A stretch of 63,360 bases of DNA, counting the filler, from Bigelowiella natans CCMP2755 (Eukaryota; Protista; Cercozoa): assembly GCA_000320545.1 (NCBI GenBank). It is 4 parts of 4 records of this genome, joined end to end, with 100 filler letters (N's around TTAATTAATTAA, not from the genome) between each part and the next. Parts side by side here need not be neighbours in the genome. Positions count along the whole stretch, not along the records: positions 1 to 27,250 come from ADNK01000263.1; 3 more parts are not named here. The stretch is one strand, 5' to 3'. Of the stretch, positions 1,510 through 21,990 are shown in pieces; within the stretch, counting starts at the first letter, position 1; each line of letters starts with the position of its first letter. The notes below the pieces were generated by a model. That model was not told the origin of the DNA. It saw only the letters and a list, made by a program, of their open reading frames with translations, and did not search any database. A program made the translations under genes and the position numbers.

Positions 1510-5949
<4,440 letters not shown>

Positions 5950-13668: not shown

Positions 13669-15779
13669 CTAACCGTCAGAATCAGAGTCAAAACATACTT
13701 CATCGAGGCATGGACCTACGCTACACGAGGATACGCACGTGTTGTAGCTGTAACAGTTAGAACCGAGTTGCGGATGAAGCTCTCTCATTTCCACTGCTTC
13801 CCACAGTCTTCGTGCAATTTCTTGATCTCGACGGACGCGCTGGCGTAACGCATTGATGCTATCAAACTTGATTGCGTCTCTGATCTTCATGATGGGATTT
13901 ATGAGAACTTTGCCATTCCACACCGAGCCAAGACCGTAGCACTCAAAGCAGGCCATGACTTCTACTTCCGTCCTACTCGCCCAGCACATTAGCACCGGTG
14001 TAGTTTGCAGACTCGTATGTCGGCAGCGACTCGGGTCGACTTGCCACTGAATCAACCCTGCGACAACGTCGCCCGGCCGTGGAGAGTGCAGCGCATGCCG
14101 CTCTGAGATCCCGTTCTTTTCGTCGACTGAGAGCAGAAGTGTTTCGAACCCGAGCGACTTCATAAATCGTGTGCCTGTGTAAGACACTACGTGTGCGGAG
14201 CAGAAAACCTCGGAGGTACCATACCGTTCTCGCGTCTCTGTGCTCTCTTTACTAGTAAGAGGCTTGGTGCAGCTATTAGCGTAATTTTCAGCAGTATTTC
14301 TTCCGCCGCTGATGCTACTGCTAATGGGGGGGCTACCGACCTTGCCGATAACATCGTTAGTCGCTGTCGTCAGATGGTCAGCTGAGATGCATGGTATGTC
14401 AATTGGAGAGCTCGACGCCCTAGTTCTAGTTCTTAACGAAGTTGCCTCGATAATAGGTAGATAGGTCCCCTTGAAGGTCTGCTCTATCGTGTCGCGCAAG
14501 CACTTTACGTATTCATCGCACTTTATCTGTCCATGTCGACACTCCTTCGAGCAAAAGCTCATATCACGGTACATGTGGATTGTGCATCTTCCCTTCAGCA
14601 CGCGCTTGCATCGGAAACACGAATCCGAATCTCTCTCCTTCTCCTCCTCCTCCGGCTTATGCTGCAGTGTTGTCTGTGGACGTGAAGAGGAAGACGACGA
14701 CGGTATCTTCTCCTTTGCGATACTACAGGGACTATCGCTGCTTGACGTCTCATGATGACAAAGACTTTTCCCCTCTGCTGTGTGCTTTTGGCTAGATTTT
14801 GAAGATGTTTGTTGCGATCGCCATTTGCCCCTTCTCCTCTGCCCTTCCTGTGCCGCTGATGGGCTCGAAATTCCATCATGACCACTATGTAAGGACCCGT
14901 GTCGCTGTTGCTTGTTCTCCTGTATAGATATAGTTGCATAAAAGTAGGAGTACCCTTGTCAGTAAGAATTTGGCAATTAAATCTTGTTCGTGTACACCAT
15001 TACTGCAATTCTATGCAATCTTACTATTTCAAAGGCAAATGCAATATTTATTGAGTCTTCTTTTGTCTACCAAAGGCCGATTTCGACATCAGCTCTCTTA
15101 TTTTTTTTAAAGGATGGAAAATATCTTTTAAAATGACCTTCTTTTTATTTTCCAATGTGAGTACGGGTGCTGTATCGTCCTCTTCGGGAAGTTTATCGGC
15201 TTCCGCCCAATTAGATTTAGAATTATGTTGATGTGGGTGATCAGAATCATATGGAGAAACAATCAGCTTCGGCGAGGGCATCTCATTGCCTTCATCATTA
15301 ACAGTGCTAATGCACCCGACTTTAAGATGTTCTCGGCAATAATCGTTAGGCCCCAAAAGTTCCTCCTCCTCACTCTCCTCCTCCTCCCCCTCCTCCTCCT
15401 TCTCGCCTCTCTTCGTTGCAAACAATGGTGTCGTAGCCGCAGTCGTTACTGCAGCACCGTTGCACTCGTCTGAAGGATCCATATGGAAATTGTTGGTTGC
15501 AACTGGTACGCTGGTGTCTTTTAGACTCCCGTCCATAGCGGCACTAAAGCTCTCACAAGATGATTGCGGAGAAATTGTCCTCCCTACCCTTGCATGTTCA
15601 TCGAGCTCCTGTTCTTCATCGCTGTAGAATGAATCTGGCTGCGATGTGACCGTAATTGGTGTGCCGCCGCCAATCCATGAAGCGATATACCCAGGGCTAA
15701 TCTGGAAACGTGGCCTAGACTCGTTCCCTTCCTTTCCAAGATTCATCTTGAGCCACCGCAGACGTAAGTCCTCCATCAT
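13669..15779 (-). CDS. FCS-like zinc finger (FLZ/DUF581) protein with C-terminal degenerate riboflavin-kinase-like domain
   Basis: The frame is open from an AG acceptor near 14920 to 13669. It contains CFRCKRVLKGRCTIHMYRDMSFCSKECRHGQIKCDE (CX2C...FCSX2C), and the C-terminus IRDAIKFDSINALRQRVRRDQEIARRL resembles the RFK C-terminal helix. The upstream acidic ORF 15048-15779 is probably exon 1; splicing is inferred. Confidence 0.7.
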
Positions 15780-17325: not shown

Positions 17326-19898
17326 ATGATCTATCTCGTTGTTGCCCTTCTTCTCCAAGATTGCTGCGCTCTTCGAGCTAGTATAAATGAAGAAGAAGAC
17401 AACACCGCCTTCACCTTTGGGGGCGACCCAGGCACCGCTGTTCTTCCAACGATCCCGGTAAGATAGAGGAGTCTAAGGAGTAGTCTTGGTTAAGCAAGAG
17501 AGATCTCACAATCGTATATTTTCAACTCACACAAATTTACTATGATTGATCAGTTCGAACGGAGTGAAATTCCAGAGATATTAAACTTAATCCACGTCGG
17601 GTCGCATCGCAAATGGATGAATACAAGCCTCAGCCGGGATGCGTATGTCCCACCCCTCGAGTACATCCAACAAGTAAAAACAAAGGATGCCTTCGGGGTT
17701 CAATATGATATTTGGAAAATCCAAAATTCTGAATCTTGGTACTCTGAGAGGAAGGTTGCATTATCTGGAAATCCAAGGGGTCAAATAGACCCCATCTACT
17801 TTTCTAGTGACTTCAACATGCACCTTACCCACTACCCTTTGGGAAAGAATCTTCCAATGATGGGACTTCGACTGGGAACTCTACTCCCGCACAAAGGAAT
17901 TTTGAAGTCCGGGGTACAGTTCCAAACACATGAGTATCCCCACTTGCTTACCGATCCCGAGTATGTACTAACATGTATTCTACGTCTTATTCTAACAGGT
18001 TGTGGCTAGTAGCCTCATCCCTGGCCTGAAAAGGGATCCATGGTCTTGGAGCCGCATTAGAGAATGCCAGCTAGATAATATAGAGTCTGGCCTTGACAAT
18101 GTCGAAAAGTCCTGGGGGTGCTATTTCCAATATCTGGACGAACGCCCACGACCACCAAGTAGTTTTATGAAACGTCTTTGAATGAAACGTTAAATCACGC
18201 CAACCAAAACGCTAGCTATAACGCAGGAAGACTATCATAATGGTATGTGAGTCTTAACTTTTATCTCCATGGTGTATATTCTTAGGAGATACAACAAATA
18301 AATACAAGCTCACGCAGCTCACCAGCATGAATCTGAGGAAGGGCTTCTGGGCAGGAACAAATAGGGGGAAGCTGAGCGGAGCGTACTTAGCAGCTCAATC
18401 AACATGGTATGCTTTCCAGTTTAATAAACATACCAGATTGGTCGTCGACGAAGCACTCGCAGAAATTCCATGGCCTACAGGTGAACAATTTAGAGACAGT
18501 ACAAGCAAAATTTGGTTAGTAGAAAACGATGTTAGATAGATGGGGTAAAATACGAAGCTACCTGCTATATTTTTGACAATGATTCTCTTTTGCTTTTGGC
18601 CTCGCTATCAACGTTGCAACTCAAATCTTAATTAGTTTATCCTTCGCATTCAACTGTTTCCTTTGACAATACAGCTTCCATTTCTCCAAAAACTGACTAG
18701 TGTCTTAATATCCTGTTCAATTATCTGCATGTCTTCTCCGGTGCAAAGATGGCAAGGCTGTGATTGCTAGCATCCATCTTCAAAGGGGGGATGTCGCAGG
18801 ATTCAATTGTAGCACATCTTCTCGCAATTTCACTACGTGTGATACAATTCATGACAAGCTCAAACAGTTGGAGTTGTACAAAGAATTTGGCGTGACGCAC
18901 GTCTATCTTTCAACCCAAGACCCGAGAGAGGTTTCGTATGCTAGAGAAATCGCACCACAATATACATGGATCTCAGCCGCAGAGGCTCCCTCGCGCCCGA
19001 AGAAAAGATTCTTGGTAAATGAGTGTACATACTGATTTGATTTTGAAGAGGTGTTCATTGTAATATCATTTTCGAGAATGACGCGGTATGTCTTGTCTAT
19101 GTACTCTCTCAGGGAGATTGCGATGAAGGAATAGAAGTCTGCCTCCTGAAAAATTCAAGAATGGAAGATTTAGACAATTTCGATGATACTAGACTGAAAG
19201 ACGAAATGACCTATCTCCTTGTGGATTTTGAGTTGAGTTCAAGAGCCCACATCAACATATTAGAGATGAACTCGTGTAACTCTTTGTCGATATTTTTATT
19301 GAGTTATGGGAGAAAAGGGTATATACCGCCGCACACTCCTTCACAATACATCCACGAAAGACTGCAAATGTGTGGGTCGATGCCTAGTGATACCTACACC
19401 GATCCATCGATCAAGCCAGTATTCCCATACTACCCAGACTTCAGTGCAGAAAATGAAACAGTAAATACAGAATTTGAAAGAGCAACTAATCAAACCACTC
19501 TTGATACGGCAACGGGTGGTTCAAATTTGGGAAGCAGAAATTTGGACGAAATTGAAAGATTAGCTAATCAAACAACTCACAACACGACAATAGAAGATGC
19601 AAAGTTGGGAGGCGAATACTTGGCTAATCGAACCGCTGTTAATAACACAATGGACGACTCAAAGTTGGGGGGCAGAAATCTGGTTGAAATTGAAAGATTA
19701 GCAAACCATACTGCTGCCAATATCACAATGGACGAGTCAAAGCTGGGGGGCGGAAACCACACCGCTCTTAATTTAACAAAGATCGATACAGAATTTGGAA
19801 GCAGCAAAGAGAATGACAAAACTGAACAAATTACAGACAATACTAGATTTTTTATTACATCTCCGCAACTAGAGGAAAGCCTAATCGCAGTGTCTTAA
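17326..19898 (+). CDS. Secreted/Golgi alpha-1,6-fucosyltransferase-like (GT23/FUT8-like) protein with C-terminal N-glycan-rich repeats
   Basis: Signal peptide MIYLVVALLLQDCCA. Motifs SWGCYFQ, IASIHLQRGD (cf. HVRRGD), HVYLSTQDP and YLLVDFELSSRAHINILEMNS occur in GT23 order. The C-terminus has imperfect ~26-aa repeats IERLANxTxxNxTxxDxKLGG. Confidence 0.55.
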
Positions 19899-20599
19899 TT
19901 TGACACTTAACCGCCATGATTAACAAATAAGTATTGGTTACTAGTTTATTGAATAGAATTCATGCACATCGGGCACAAACTCGAGTACAAACACAATGAC
20001 ATTATTTTAAGTTATATGAGTAACAACCGAAGCCTGGTAGAGTAAGGCGAATTAATCAAACTGTGTGTTCATGCAAGGTCTAATTGTCATGCTCCTTTCG
20101 CCCTCCACTTTTCCCAAGCATGAGCCGATGAGCATGCCATTTCCCAACATCATCAACGCAACAGATGACATCATGAGCTGCAGGTTCGCTCTGGGCGGCG
20201 TGATGGGCTGCTTAGTCAATTCGCATGCCCCAGCCATGCGGGCCCGAGATGCGCCATGGAGCGCATCTGCTAGTCGTGTTGACGACGTGTGTGCGTGTCT
20301 GCACAAGCTGGCATTCATCGATCGCCACGAGCGCTAGAGCGCACGAGATTTCATGCACAAAGCACTGGTGCGCAGCCCTAGAAATGCACTGTCAGACTGG
20401 CGCAATCATGTGCTGACACAACCCCGCCGCCGTGTTGCGACCACATGCCCCACACTTCATTTCCCTGCCAATCAATCAATTGATTTCGATGGTGCAGCTG
20501 GAACAAATGAACAAATGAACATGATGATGGACTGCATTTCCAAAACGTTGCAAGACATTTGCAAAGCACGAAACGCAGTGCCTCGAACTAACTTCAGTG

Positions 20600-21990
20600 A
20601 AGGATGACTGGCAATGAACAATGAACAATGAAGAAAGCGTTGATCAAAACTGCATGCGCCAGAACCACATGGGAGACAGGCATTTGCACGCAGCAGAGCC
20701 TCAACAACACTCGTTGCAAGGACTTGTCAGCACCCTGTTGGTGAGAGACACAAAAAATCAGCCGCATCCCCTGAAATTGGCATGGATGCCGATCAATGGT
20801 GCCGTTGAGATGTGAATTGGTTGGAACTGAAGCTGGCATCTTGGATGCCGAACCGCAGCAAAAGTGTCAAGCAGGACAATGGTTCGACGGAAAGCCCTGT
20901 CGATTTCTTTGTCAGTCGAAGGGACACCAGATGTGGCCCCCAAAGCGAGGCAAAACTTGTCATGGGAAGACATGGCAGAGAAAGCACGCAACGTGACCAC
21001 GTCATCATTGGCATCAGGTTGATGACGAGACACCAGGTGACGAATCCTGGTCCAAAAACGGTCTCTGATGTCACACGTTCCTTGGCAGGAGAACAAAAGG
21101 TGCATCAGGGACATGTCTTCGTGAGAATCGCACAAGGAGCACAAGCCCTCATGTTGCTCCAGTGCGAAGAATCTGGCAGTGTTGTGACGCCACCACAAGG
21201 CTCCACAACGAGCTTGGAATTTGAGGGACACACCACGGGCATCGTTCCATTCATCGAGGCACTTGGAGCAGTGAAGATGGGCCGGTTTGCCCACTTCCCC
21301 CTGGCTCCAAAATTGCAGCTTGGAAATCGGCTCCCACGACCGAACTTCCAAAAGATGCCGAAGAGAATGCATTCTGCTCACCTGGGCACGCACCAAACGA
21401 GCATCGCGAGATGCAATTGAGGAGGTTACAGACTGGCGAAGCCAGCAAGATTTGAGAATTGGCAAAATGGAAGCATCACCAAGGACAAGTTTTTCGACCG
21501 CAGCGCTGAGAAAGGACGAGTTGGAGACAAGAGGAAGTTTTTCCAAGATGTAAGCGATTCATAGTGAGCGACATGATGAATGGGTTATTTTTGGTGTTTT
21601 TTCACCTCGCAAGAAGTGGACATATAATCCAAAGGACAAGCTTCCTCCTCCATCCCGAGACTCTAGTGGCGCCGCTGCATCGCTGGTTGTGCCTCCGCTG
21701 CGGCTAGCTTGAATGGACCATTTCGAAAGTTTTGTAAAACAAATTAAATCCGAACTTGTTACATACGAGTGAAGATCTACCCTCCGCACTTGTCGAGGAC
21801 ATAGTAGACGGGCGGTGGTGTTCGCAATTTCCAAGAAGGGTCTTGCTTCGAGTCCGGTTCACCCGGGCTGGACCTGCTAAAGCACCTCCTTTCGATTTTC
21901 CTCCATGGATTCGAATGTGTTTTCGAATCTGTGGGTGAGTTCGGAATCGAAATATCATCAAAGTGTGCAATATTTCTCCATTAGTAATTT
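20600..21990 (-). mobile_element. 5'-truncated, degenerate non-LTR retrotransposon (LINE ORF2 C-terminus)
   Basis: ORF 20758-21546 has the post-RT zinc knuckle LKFQARCG...CSLCDSHEDMSLMHLLFSC (CX2C..H..C). The upstream part is frameshifted. A simple-repeat tail lies at 20613-20632. Boundaries are approximate. Confidence 0.75.

What the first reader, a model, noticed from the sequence alone, without database searches (positions are those of the whole stretch)
20591..21426. 836 nt with zero TpA in a LINE remnant: candidate RIP-like A-to-G genome-defence system
Seen: by manual scan no TA dinucleotide occurs from 20591 to 21426, where tens are expected at about 50% GC. CpG and ApT stay common. The 262-aa LINE ORF has no Tyr but has His/Cys where Tyr would fit (KSCW, SLRHL, KPAHL), the products of TAY to CAY/TGY. 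Long ORFs appear in several frames because TAA/TAG are gone. In the flank 20080-20590 surviving TAs are CTAG/CTAA/TTAG. Established: fungal RIP and 5mC deamination are C-to-T and create or ignore TpA, so they cannot do this; TadA-derived adenine deaminases favour A preceded by T. Inference: a both-strand A-to-G hypermutation of TpA (DNA adenine deamination or a modified-adenine pathway) targets transposons or silent DNA. I know of no described mechanism for this.
Basis: partly seen in the sequence, partly recalled or inferred. Interest (0 to 1): 0.9.

Follow-up and report, generated by a model that had tools for sequence, protein, structure and literature searches.

The report
TpA-erased LINE copy in Bigelowiella
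The stretch without a single TA is a truncated jumping-gene (LINE) copy in the alga Bigelowiella natans. Its TA sites were converted to TG or CA by a TA-specific hypermutation of foreign DNA, which a 2026 preprint has already shown experimentally in this species.

Summary
Window 20590-21426 holds no TA where 46 are expected; TG and CA are enriched (observed/expected 1.72 and 1.47). The stretch is the 3' 816-927 bp of a 5'-truncated LINE on the minus strand of the Bigelowiella natans nuclear genome.

- **Outgroup:** a related LINE with normal TA content has 52 TA sites; in the B. natans copy these read TG (23) or CA (19). Its Tyr codons became His or Cys, never Phe.
- **Sister copies:** in 96-99% identical copies, three sites vary between TA, TG and CA in a mosaic. 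This indicates conversion after insertion, at roughly 90 times the private substitution rate.
- **Flanks:** the single-copy flanks (20081-20500, 21428-21550) are TA-depleted too.

The phenomenon is not new. Preprint 10.64898/2026.01.13.699255 shows, with mutation-accumulation lines, TpA-to-TpG/CpA hypermutation of integrated viral DNA in this species. It also reports TpA-poor genes enriched for reverse transcriptases. The enzyme is unknown.

Details not in the preprint's main text: CTAG is strongly refractory (69 of 129 surviving TA in 67 kb), depletion extends into unique flanks, ApT shows weak secondary loss, and the Tyr-free reverse transcriptase keeps its FADD motif.

The parts
20590..21426 (.). 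TA-free interval (0 TA, 46 expected; TG and CA enriched)
20612..21427 (-). 5'-truncated LINE copy, the 3'-terminal 816 bp of the element. The 3' end is shared with more than 100 genomic matches, whose 5' ends vary. The 3' tail is (CAATGAA)3 on the plus strand at 20612-20632. The terminal 159-bp unit (20612-20770) is tandemly repeated in other copies.
   Evidence: k-mer depth falls from about 1000x single-copy depth at the 3' end to about 2x at the 5' end
20501..20611 (-). Extra repeated 3'-terminal unit of the same family, with (GAACAAAT)2.6 at 20501-20521. It is contiguous with the main body in some other copies.
20758..21546 (-). Tyr-free open frame of 262 codons. 20758-21427 encodes the C-terminal region downstream of the reverse transcriptase, near-identical to P0001/P0051 (JGI Bigna1 82453). 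21428-21546 is open only because the flank also lacks TAA and TAG.
20081..20500 (.). Single-copy flank next to the LINE 3' end with the conversion signature: TA observed/expected 0.24, TG 1.77, CA 1.68, GC 55% against 41% outside. The edge at 20081 is sharp. No RNA reads were laid on 20072-20473.
21428..21550 (.). Single-copy flank next to the 5' truncation point: 0 TA in 123 nt, with normal TA density from 21551 onward
20651..20652 (.). TG here; TA (6), TG (9) or CA (4) in sister copies. This site was converted after the copies separated.
   Evidence: A at 20652 is also seen in other copies in the reads
20828..20829 (.). TG here; TA (8), TG (13) or CA (5) in sister copies
21260..21261 (.). 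CA here; TA, TG and CA in roughly equal numbers in sister copies
20271..20380 (.). Three surviving TA, all in CTAG (20271, 20335, 20379). The other survivors of the block are CTAA (20081, 20589), TTAG (20213) and TTAC (21427, at the LINE/flank junction).

Best explanation
The TA-free stretch is the 3' part of a 5'-truncated LINE in the Bigelowiella natans nuclear genome. The LINE carries a reverse transcriptase (RT); a related element also carries an APE-type endonuclease. A host process has stripped the copy, and a few hundred bases of single-copy DNA on both sides, of TpA. That process converts TpA to TpG or CpA, an A:T-to-G:C transition on either strand, in foreign, mobile or silent DNA.

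Shown:
- The direction and the two-strand symmetry of the change.
- Its near-restriction to TpA.
- That it continued after individual copies had inserted.
- That it reaches non-repeated flanks.
- That CTAG is hit much less than other contexts.
- In the preprint, that it happens de novo in DNA during vegetative growth, at about 1000 times the background rate.

Inferred:
- The progenitor lineage of this family was depleted step by step. It kept transposing with a Tyr-free protein, so this copy inherited most of its TA loss and lost its last TA in place.
- The chemistry. My best guess (about 0.45) is enzymatic deamination of adenine to hypoxanthine at 5'-TA-3' on either DNA strand, read as G at the next replication.
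- The targeting. It is presumably chromatin- or RNA-guided, with sharp domain edges.

The stated confidence is for the DNA-level TpA hypermutation, not for the enzyme.
For: Identity of the element:
- The window ORF matches P0001/P0051, a JGI B. natans gene model.
- Longer copies carry RVT_1 with an intact FADD motif and no Tyr.
- The 39%-identical relative P0003 carries an APE-type endonuclease domain as well as RVT_1.
- More than 100 genomic matches share the 3' end and have variable 5' ends.

The whole family is TA-poor, including about 12 kb on contig C1194.

Polarity:
- The outgroup contig L039 is 81% identical at the DNA level, has TA observed/expected 0.67 and an intact ORF with 8 Tyr.
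- Of its 52 TA sites, the own-genome copy has TG at 23, CA at 19 and TA at 1.
- Its Tyr codons became His (2-3), Cys (3-4), Asp (1) and Arg (1), none Phe.
- A-to-G conversion is about 46% per A in the TAN context against about 10% elsewhere.

Action in place:
- Thirteen alignment columns are polymorphic for CA/TG, against at most 5 for any other double-transition pair.
- Three sites are TA/TG/CA in a mosaic among 96-99% identical copies.
- 38 of 56 copy-sites are converted, about 90 times the private substitution rate per nucleotide.

Flanks:
- Both window flanks are single copy and TA-depleted with TG/CA excess.
- Across 30 copies, the median distance to the first TA beyond the 5' junction is 69 nt against 19 nt for the null (p = 1e-5).

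Context: 129 TA survive in 66.9 kb of depleted DNA and 69 of them are CTAG, spread over 28 of 31 sequences.

Independent experiment (preprint 10.64898/2026.01.13.699255):
- 230 of 231 de novo mutations in two viral inserts are A>G or T>C, which the authors place on TpA.
- TpA-depleted coding sequences are enriched for RT, endonuclease-RT and DDE domains.
Against: - No change was seen at this locus. Contigs of runs from 2021 and 2025 are identical to the reference in the unique flanks, so activity here is historical, as expected once targets are exhausted.
- Private substitutions that create new TA in the copies occur at close to the expected number (19 against 25.3, p = 0.08). Purging of new TA is therefore not fast, or not constant.
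- The unique flanks could be old relics of other foreign DNA rather than host DNA reached by spreading. One copy (C927) has sharp edges with no shoulder.
- Against deamination by an ADAT2/3- or ADAR-type enzyme: from general knowledge, their natural substrates favour or tolerate U-A-G. Here TAG/CTAG is the least mutated context (preprint Table S2).
- The deaminase census shows nothing conspicuous.
Confidence: 0.85

Rival explanations
1. The composition is intrinsic and maintained by selection. The LINE lineage evolved to avoid TA, for example to escape a TA/UA-specific nuclease or TA-targeting transposons, or as an escape from the hypermutation itself. Copies simply inherit it.
For: The family majority has only 2 TA in 816 columns, and 99% identical copies are equally TA-free. 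The Tyr-free ORFs remain long and keep FADD. The family is transcribed. New TA arising by private mutation are not obviously purged.
Against: - Selection on an active master cannot produce mosaic TA/TG/CA states among near-identical dead copies.
- It cannot deplete single-copy, non-coding flanks.
- Outgroup Tyr became His or Cys (transitions), never the conservative Phe.
- A mutational process with exactly this signature is measured directly in the same species.
Confidence: 0.06
2. RNA-level A-to-I editing (ADAR-like) of the LINE transcript, or editing of the cDNA during retrotransposition, fixed by reverse transcription. There would be no action on chromosomal DNA.
For: ADAR prefers a 5' U (general knowledge). 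The LINE has an RNA intermediate and is transcribed. The genome has one A_deamin-domain gene.
Against: - Outcomes are symmetric: TG 23 against CA 19 on the sense strand. Sense-RNA editing would give only TA-to-TG.
- Unique genomic flanks are converted.
- Copies differ after insertion.
- The preprint's main target is a transcriptionally silent single-copy DNA insert.
- ADAR favours a 3' G, whereas TAG is the least converted context.
Confidence: 0.04
3. The phenomenon is the same, DNA-level and TpA-specific, but the chemistry is not adenine deamination. One option is targeted nicking or excision followed by error-prone patch synthesis, as polymerase eta makes A:T-to-G:C changes at WA motifs in antibody hypermutation. 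Another is a modified thymine or adenine that mispairs.
For: - No dedicated DNA adenine deaminase is evident.
- The TAG/CTAG aversion does not fit ADAT2/3 or ADAR substrate preferences (general knowledge).
- There is weak secondary loss of ApT: the outgroup has 83 AT, the own copy 45, mostly AT to AC or GT. The four non-TpA T>C mutations in the preprint's scaffold-10 table all sit at ApT.
- Polymerase eta's known hotspot is WA with A-to-G predominant (general knowledge).
Against: AA contexts are not elevated, unlike a WA hotspot. The near-exclusive transition outcome and strict dinucleotide specificity (210 of 211 in the giant-virus (NCLDV) insert) are more typical of a base-editing enzyme than of a sloppy polymerase.
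Confidence: 0.2
4. Assembly or sequencing artefact, or contamination by foreign DNA with an odd composition.
For: None found.
Against: Independent DNA runs carry the same unique flanks joined to the repeat. More than 100 matches lie on many contigs, embedded in normal DNA. Transcripts exist in the MMETSP marine protist transcriptome collection.
Confidence: 0.01

Closest known systems
TpA hypermutation of integrated viral DNA in Bigelowiella natans (Mettrop et al., bioRxiv 10.64898/2026.01.13.699255, 2026)
   Same: Same organism and same signature: TpA to TpG or CpA on both strands, TpA depletion with TpG/CpA gain, and foreign or mobile DNA as target. The preprint already lists RT and endonuclease-RT domains among TpA-depleted coding sequences.
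   Different: The preprint measures de novo events in a giant-virus (NCLDV) insert and a virophage insert that still hold many TA. Here the target is a LINE family driven to near-complete TpA exhaustion. The evidence here is comparative (an outgroup and paralogous copies), not experimental. CTAG refractoriness, depletion of unique flanks, Tyr-free but otherwise intact RT frames, and secondary ApT loss are not in its main text.
Repeat-induced point mutation (RIP) of fungi
   Same: A host-driven, dinucleotide-specific transition hypermutation that degrades transposons in place and can leak into flanks.
   Different: RIP is C-to-T, mostly at CpA, and creates TpA; here TpA is destroyed. RIP needs duplicated sequence and acts before meiosis. 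Here single-copy DNA is hit, and in the preprint during vegetative growth.
ADAR A-to-I hyperediting of repeat-derived double-stranded RNA (animals)
   Same: A-to-G outcome and a preference for a 5' U/T.
   Different: ADAR acts on RNA and favours a 3' G. Here the change is in chromosomal DNA, symmetric on both strands, and TAG is the least affected context.
APOBEC3/AID editing of retroelements and viruses
   Same: Deaminase-type innate defence that leaves context-specific hypermutation in integrated copies.
   Different: It deaminates cytosine (G-to-A or C-to-T), mostly on single-stranded cDNA, and is strand-asymmetric.
TadA/ADAT2-ADAT3 tRNA adenosine deaminases and TadA-derived DNA base editors
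   Same: They act on A preceded by U/T. Engineered or unusual members can deaminate DNA. The preprint proposes the ADAT2 homologue Bn78255.
   Different: Natural ADAT2/3 substrates are mostly U-A-G (general knowledge), the context least converted here. No link between any B. natans deaminase and the signature has been shown.

Membership tests
B. natans TpA-to-TpG/CpA hypermutated foreign DNA (preprint 2026) | Sequence belongs to the Bigelowiella natans nuclear genome | tested here: met
   A protein of the family clusters with the JGI Bigna1 82453 / EukProt Bigelowiella natans entry. The assembly is 91.4 Mb, and the window maps to G000:C3474.
B. natans TpA-to-TpG/CpA hypermutated foreign DNA (preprint 2026) | [quoted passage not shown] | tested here: met
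   TA 0.00; TG+CA 163 observed against 103.5 expected, ratio 1.57. For the cut-offs.
B. natans TpA-to-TpG/CpA hypermutated foreign DNA (preprint 2026) | Changes are TA-to-TG and TA-to-CA transitions, on both strands | tested here: met
   Outgroup TA sites read TG (23) or CA (19) out of 52. Sister copies show TA/TG/CA trimorphism.
B. natans TpA-to-TpG/CpA hypermutated foreign DNA (preprint 2026) | Target of viral, transposon or other foreign origin | tested here: met
   RVT_1 in longer copies. LINE-like copy structure.
B. natans TpA-to-TpG/CpA hypermutated foreign DNA (preprint 2026) | De novo mutation at this locus in mutation-accumulation lines | tested here: inconclusive
   There were 0 differences in the unique flanks in contigs of three DNA runs. 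Only 7 refractory TA remain, contigs drop rare variants, and the repeat part is collapsed.
Non-LTR retrotransposon (LINE) | Reverse transcriptase domain of the non-LTR type | tested here: met
   RVT_1 E = 1e-19 in L035:1984-3870, which continues into the region homologous to the window ORF. FADD motif present.
Non-LTR retrotransposon (LINE) | Common 3' end, variable 5' truncation, more copies of 3' parts | tested here: met
   Matches start at query 532 and end between 600 and 1347. Only 5 loci reach the RT region. Depth gradient.
Non-LTR retrotransposon (LINE) | Endonuclease domain (APE type) in the full-length element | tested here: inconclusive
   Exo_endo_phos_2 is seen in the 39%-identical relative P0003.
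Non-LTR retrotransposon (LINE) | Target-site duplication | tested here: not met
   Read by eye only: no obvious duplication at 20501 or 20612 versus 21427. Not tested systematically.
Fungal RIP | C-to-T at CpA, creating TpA | tested here: not met
   The direction is the opposite: TpA is lost, TG and CA are gained.
Fungal RIP | Dependence on sequence duplication | tested here: not met
   Single-copy flanks carry the signature. The preprint's giant-virus (NCLDV) target is single copy.
ADAR-type RNA editing | Edits the transcribed strand only; 3' G favoured | tested here: not met
   TG:CA is 23:19. TAG/CTAG is the least converted context.

The most novel reading that the evidence does not exclude
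The sequence preferences found here are a strict TpA target, strong protection of CTAG and a weaker one of CTA/TAG, and a minor ApT side-activity. Together with sharp-edged domains that include 50-400 nt of single-copy flank, they do not fit ADAT2/3, TadA or ADAR substrate rules. If so, the activity belongs to an undescribed double-stranded-DNA adenine (or thymine) editing pathway guided by chromatin domains. LINE lineages would survive it by running out of target sites, carrying Tyr-free proteins.
Probability: 0.35. Interest if true: 0.8.

Novelty: already known. Interest (0 to 1): 0.5.

Why it matters
A TpA-specific A:T-to-G:C hypermutation aimed at foreign DNA is a genome defence mechanistically unlike RIP, APOBEC or ADAR.

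This window adds the end state of the process:
- A whole LINE family, and apparently other element types, is driven to zero TpA.
- The encoded proteins have no tyrosine yet keep long frames, the RT catalytic motif and transcription.

It also adds constraints useful for finding the enzyme: CTAG protection, an ApT side-activity, symmetric strands, sharp domain edges and the inclusion of unique flanks. A natural TpA-specific DNA A-to-G editor would interest the base-editing field as well.

Tried and rejected
- **Pfam on the window ORFs** gave nothing useful. The LINE identity came from longer copies.
- **Rfam** found nothing in the window.
- **An unmutated copy** was sought in the own genome with the outgroup DNA. 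None is closer than 81-88% identity.
- **Deaminase census** (A_deamin, MafB19/TadA fold): one ADAT1-like gene on C2414 and about six CDA-fold loci. By eye these look like two GuaD/TadA-like paralogues, a TadA-like gene, a dCMP deaminase, an ADAT3-like gene and a fragment. No fusion to chromatin or DNA-binding domains was seen, and no conclusion is possible.
- **Context availability for the preprint's mutation table:** Only 3.5 kb around the capsid gene was available (TA observed/expected 0.50).
- **Genome-wide CTAG excess in normal DNA:** not seen in the normal part of the window (CTAG observed/expected 0.72, like TA overall). An earlier hint was dropped.
- **Read-through transcription as a guide for the 3' shoulder:** no RNA reads on 20072-20473 in the one RNA run laid, of which about 6% was read. 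Not supported, not excluded.
- **Strand-coordinated clusters:** a hand runs test on the preprint's line 19, using positions read, gave 19 runs against 22.8 expected. No clustering.
- **Source organism of the Tyr-free transcript P0007:** not identified.

Majority states were used only inside scripts to polarise substitutions.
Full report
**1. The observation**

The piece (27,250 bases, GC 45%) has TA observed/expected 0.73 overall. Between the TA at 20589 and the TA at 21427 there is none. In 20591-21426 the count is 0 against 46 expected. TG is at 1.72, CA at 1.47, CG at 0.67 and AT at 1.04. This is by far the longest TA-free gap in the piece (838 nt; the next are 210 and 175). From a random start in normal DNA of the window, a gap of 120 nt or more has probability 0.003.

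It runs from 20081 to 21551 with only 7 TA. It is the only such block in the window.

The 262-codon frame at 20758-21546 on the minus strand has no Tyr, and several other frames are open. The six TA in 20081-20590 are CTAG (3), CTAA (2) and TTAG (1). Contigs of independent DNA runs from 2021 and 2025 reproduce the unique flanks without a single difference. The composition is therefore not an assembly artefact.

**2. What the sequence is**

The genome is Bigelowiella natans. A protein of the family clusters with JGI Bigna1 82453 / EukProt Bigelowiella natans. The assembly has 91.4 Mb.

Window 20612-21427 matches more than 100 places in the genome. These share one end (query 532, window 20612) and stop at variable points on the other side. 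Only five loci reach the upstream region. K-mer depth in DNA runs falls from about 1000 times single-copy depth at 20608-20741 to about 2 times at 21412-21545. This is the pattern of a LINE on the minus strand with 5' truncation.

- The 3' end carries (CAATGAA)3 as read on the plus strand, and a 159-bp unit that is tandemly repeated in other copies.
- 20501-20611 is a further repeated terminal unit.
- Longer copies encode RVT_1 (E = 1e-19) in the same frame as the region homologous to the window ORF.
- A 39%-identical relative also has an APE-type endonuclease domain.
- The family is transcribed: there is an MMETSP (marine protist transcriptome collection) transcript at 97% identity, and RNA reads cover the 3' end.

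**3. The whole family is TA-poor**

All 30 loci fetched show TA-free or nearly TA-free blocks that coincide with the element. Contig C1194 has about 12 kb with some 15 TA. It includes two RT fragments and four long Tyr-free frames without Pfam matches. One of these resembles P-element/THAP9-type transposases by language-model features, which is a lead only.

The RT frames have no Tyr but keep the FADD catalytic motif. The majority state of the family over the 816 columns has only 2 TA.

The second half, the bias among copies, decides the matter.

**4. Direction of change, from an outgroup**

The closest protein hit outside the genome (P0002) is 83% identical at the protein level. It lies on a 2.7-kb contig filed in a Bacteroidota metagenome bin, which is evidently a misplaced eukaryotic contig. 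That contig (L039) is 81% identical at the DNA level to the B. natans element. It has normal TA (observed/expected 0.67), and its ORF carries 8 Tyr.

- Of its 52 TA sites aligned to the own-genome copy on C927, 23 are TG, 19 are CA, 1 is TA and 9 are other.
- Every other dinucleotide is 41-86% conserved; TA is 2% conserved.
- A-to-G, folded over both strands, is about 46% per A in TAN contexts against about 10% elsewhere.
- Outgroup Tyr codons are now His, Cys, Asp or Arg, never Phe.

Tyr at conserved RT positions must be ancestral, so the polarity is TA to TG/CA in the B. natans lineage. The near-equal TG and CA counts on the sense strand argue for a double-stranded DNA target, not editing of the sense RNA.

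Where two diverged own copies can be compared at 18 ancestral TA sites, they share the outcome at 11 sites and differ at 7. Depletion therefore went on while the family diversified.

**5. Action on copies in place**

In the query-anchored alignment of 30 copies, 13 column pairs hold both CA and TG in at least two copies each. No other double-transition pair has more than 5.

Three sites (window 20651, 20828, 21260) are TA in some copies, TG in others and CA in others. The states are distributed as a mosaic even within the closest group, which is 98.5-99% identical to the window copy. A master can lose a given TA only once, so independent conversion after insertion is the economical reading. 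The window copy lost its last TA in this way: TG at 20651 and CA at 21260.

Overall, 38 of 56 copy-sites are converted. This is about 90 times the private substitution rate per nucleotide (0.006). The figure is rough, because some conversions may be shared by descent.

Private substitutions that create new TA are near expectation (19 against 25.3). Old copies such as L027 have regained TA. The purge is therefore neither constant nor everlasting. This fits the preprint's finding that the process is active only in some lines.

**6. Flanks**

Window 20060-20530 and window 21428-21620 are each single copy in the assembly. Yet within them:
- 20081-20500 has TA at 0.24, TG at 1.77, CA at 1.68 and GC 55% against 41% outside.
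- 21428-21550 has no TA.

TA density returns to normal abruptly at 20081 and at 21551.

Across 30 copies, the first TA beyond the 5' junction lies a median of 69 nt away. On the 3' side it is 248 nt, and from random starts 19 nt (p = 1e-5 and 6e-12). These boundaries rest on my limited set of loci.

There are two possible readings. Either the process reaches beyond the element by something like a nucleosome or more, or the LINE tends to sit in older depleted relics. One copy (C927) has sharp edges without a shoulder. Either way, non-repeated DNA carries the signature, so duplication is not what triggers it.

**7. Context rule**

In 66.9 kb of depleted DNA from 31 sequences, only 129 TA survive, and 69 of them are CTAG, spread over 28 of the sequences.

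| Context | Survival: TA / (TA + TG + CA) |
|---|---|
| CTAG | 0.11 |
| CTAA/TTAG and CTAC/GTAG | about 0.013-0.015 |
| All other contexts | 0.008 or less |

Regeneration of CTAG from CCAG is not favoured: C-to-T at CCA is 0 of 44 in the outgroup comparison.

The preprint's Table S2 points the same way. I counted by hand, on scaffold 10 only. A>G at TAG is 3 of about 97, and T>C at CTA is 17 of about 115. Availability in a 3.5-kb sample of the giant-virus (NCLDV) insert is about 20-24%. The difference between 3 and 17 is unexplained.

The preprint's main text does not mention tetranucleotide context.

A weaker loss of ApT is also visible. The outgroup has 83 AT and the own copy 45, with 21 AT-to-AC and 13 AT-to-GT changes against 6 in reverse. 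The four non-TpA T>C mutations in the scaffold-10 part of Table S2 all sit at ApT.

**8. What is already known**

Preprint 10.64898/2026.01.13.699255 (Mettrop et al., version of April 2026) reports 15 mutation-accumulation lines of B. natans.
- 231 of 302 nuclear single-nucleotide mutations fall in an integrated giant-virus (NCLDV) insert of about 186 kb and a virophage insert of about 25 kb.
- 230 of these are A>G or T>C. The authors place them on TpA, at about 1000 times the background rate, and only in some lines.
- 324 TpA-poor coding sequences are enriched for RT, endonuclease-RT, DDE and a zinc-finger domain.
- There are 124 genomic clusters of TpA-poor, CpA+TpG-rich windows.
- An ADAT2 homologue (Bn78255) is proposed as the candidate enzyme.

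Further literature searches found only RIP and APOBEC work. The enzyme and the targeting remain unknown.

**9. Mechanism**

Shown:
- DNA-level, two-strand TpA to TpG/CpA conversion.
- Confinement to sharply bounded domains of foreign or mobile DNA.
- Independence from copy number.
- Refractoriness of CTAG.

Inferred: adenine deamination to hypoxanthine on either strand (my estimate about 0.45). From general knowledge, ADAT2/3 substrates are mostly U-A-G and ADAR prefers a 3' G. This sits badly with TAG being the worst context.

The alternatives are error-prone patch repair or a mispairing modified base. AA contexts are not affected, unlike the WA hotspot of polymerase eta. The census of deaminase-fold genes in the genome is unremarkable.

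**10. Verdict**

- Observation: confirmed.
- Interpretation: supported in substance, with three caveats. 'RIP-like' holds only by analogy, most of the depletion in this copy was inherited, and the process is no longer undescribed.
- Novelty: already known, with new details (sections 5-7).
- Interest: 0.5.

Noticed in passing
P0007 (MMETSP transcript, 604 aa): A second LINE reverse transcriptase with no Tyr at all, carrying SNCRGIT and HDCVWRK where the outgroup has SNYRGIT and CDYVWRK. It is not encoded in this assembly (best match 42% identity). It may come from another strain or another chlorarachniophyte, which would extend the process beyond this genome.
   Followed up: partly
L039 (GCA_039817665.1 contig JBCBVK010000623.1, 2695 bp): A contig filed in a Bacteroidota metagenome bin is a eukaryotic LINE, 81% identical in DNA to the B. 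natans family, with normal TA content and an intact Tyr-containing ORF. It is probably a mis-binned contig from a relative in which this element is not hypermutated.
   Followed up: partly
G000:C1194:10000-22000 (L035, L036): About 12 kb with roughly 15 TA. It contains two RT fragments plus Tyr-free frames of 780, 468, 426 and 404 aa without Pfam matches. The 780-aa frame resembles P-element/THAP9-type transposases by language-model features only.
   Followed up: partly
L039 versus L023 alignment; preprint Table S2: There is net loss of ApT in the hypermutated copy (83 to 45, mostly AT to AC or GT). The four non-TpA T>C mutations in the scaffold-10 part of the preprint's table all lie at ApT. 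This may be a weak secondary target.
   Followed up: partly
preprint Table S2: Among de novo mutations on scaffold 10, A>G at TAG is much rarer (3) than its strand-symmetric equivalent, T>C at CTA (17). The asymmetry is unexplained.
   Followed up: no
window 19536-20071: RNA reads (first mate on the plus strand) cover the end of the 245-aa ORF 19161-19898 and its downstream region. They stop just before the TA-poor block begins at 20081. The ORF encodes a repetitive Asn/Thr-rich protein with no Pfam match.
   Followed up: no
window 20608-20741: The terminal 159-bp unit of the LINE has about 1000 times single-copy k-mer depth in DNA runs. It occurs in tandem arrays of variable number at other loci, far outnumbering the rest of the element.
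   Followed up: no
G000:C980:65313-65621 and G000:C3623:2918-3217: Two paralogous small deaminases of the GuaD/TadA-like type (HAE ... PCPMC motifs). They are untested candidates, alongside the ADAT2 homologue named in the preprint.
   Followed up: no
window 5416-5949 and 13669-14601: Ordinary host gene fragments: an adenylosuccinate lyase C-terminal domain, and a frame with weak FLZ zinc-finger and riboflavin kinase hits. Both have normal TA content.
   Followed up: no
several loci near LINE copies (e.g. L006 1-600, L023 400-1200): TA-rich microsatellite-like stretches (up to 43 TA per 200 bp) lie untouched close to TA-free blocks. A 2026 paper (PMC13746701) notes that AC:GT repeats are unusually common in B. 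natans. Any link to TA-to-TG/CA conversion is pure speculation.
   Followed up: no
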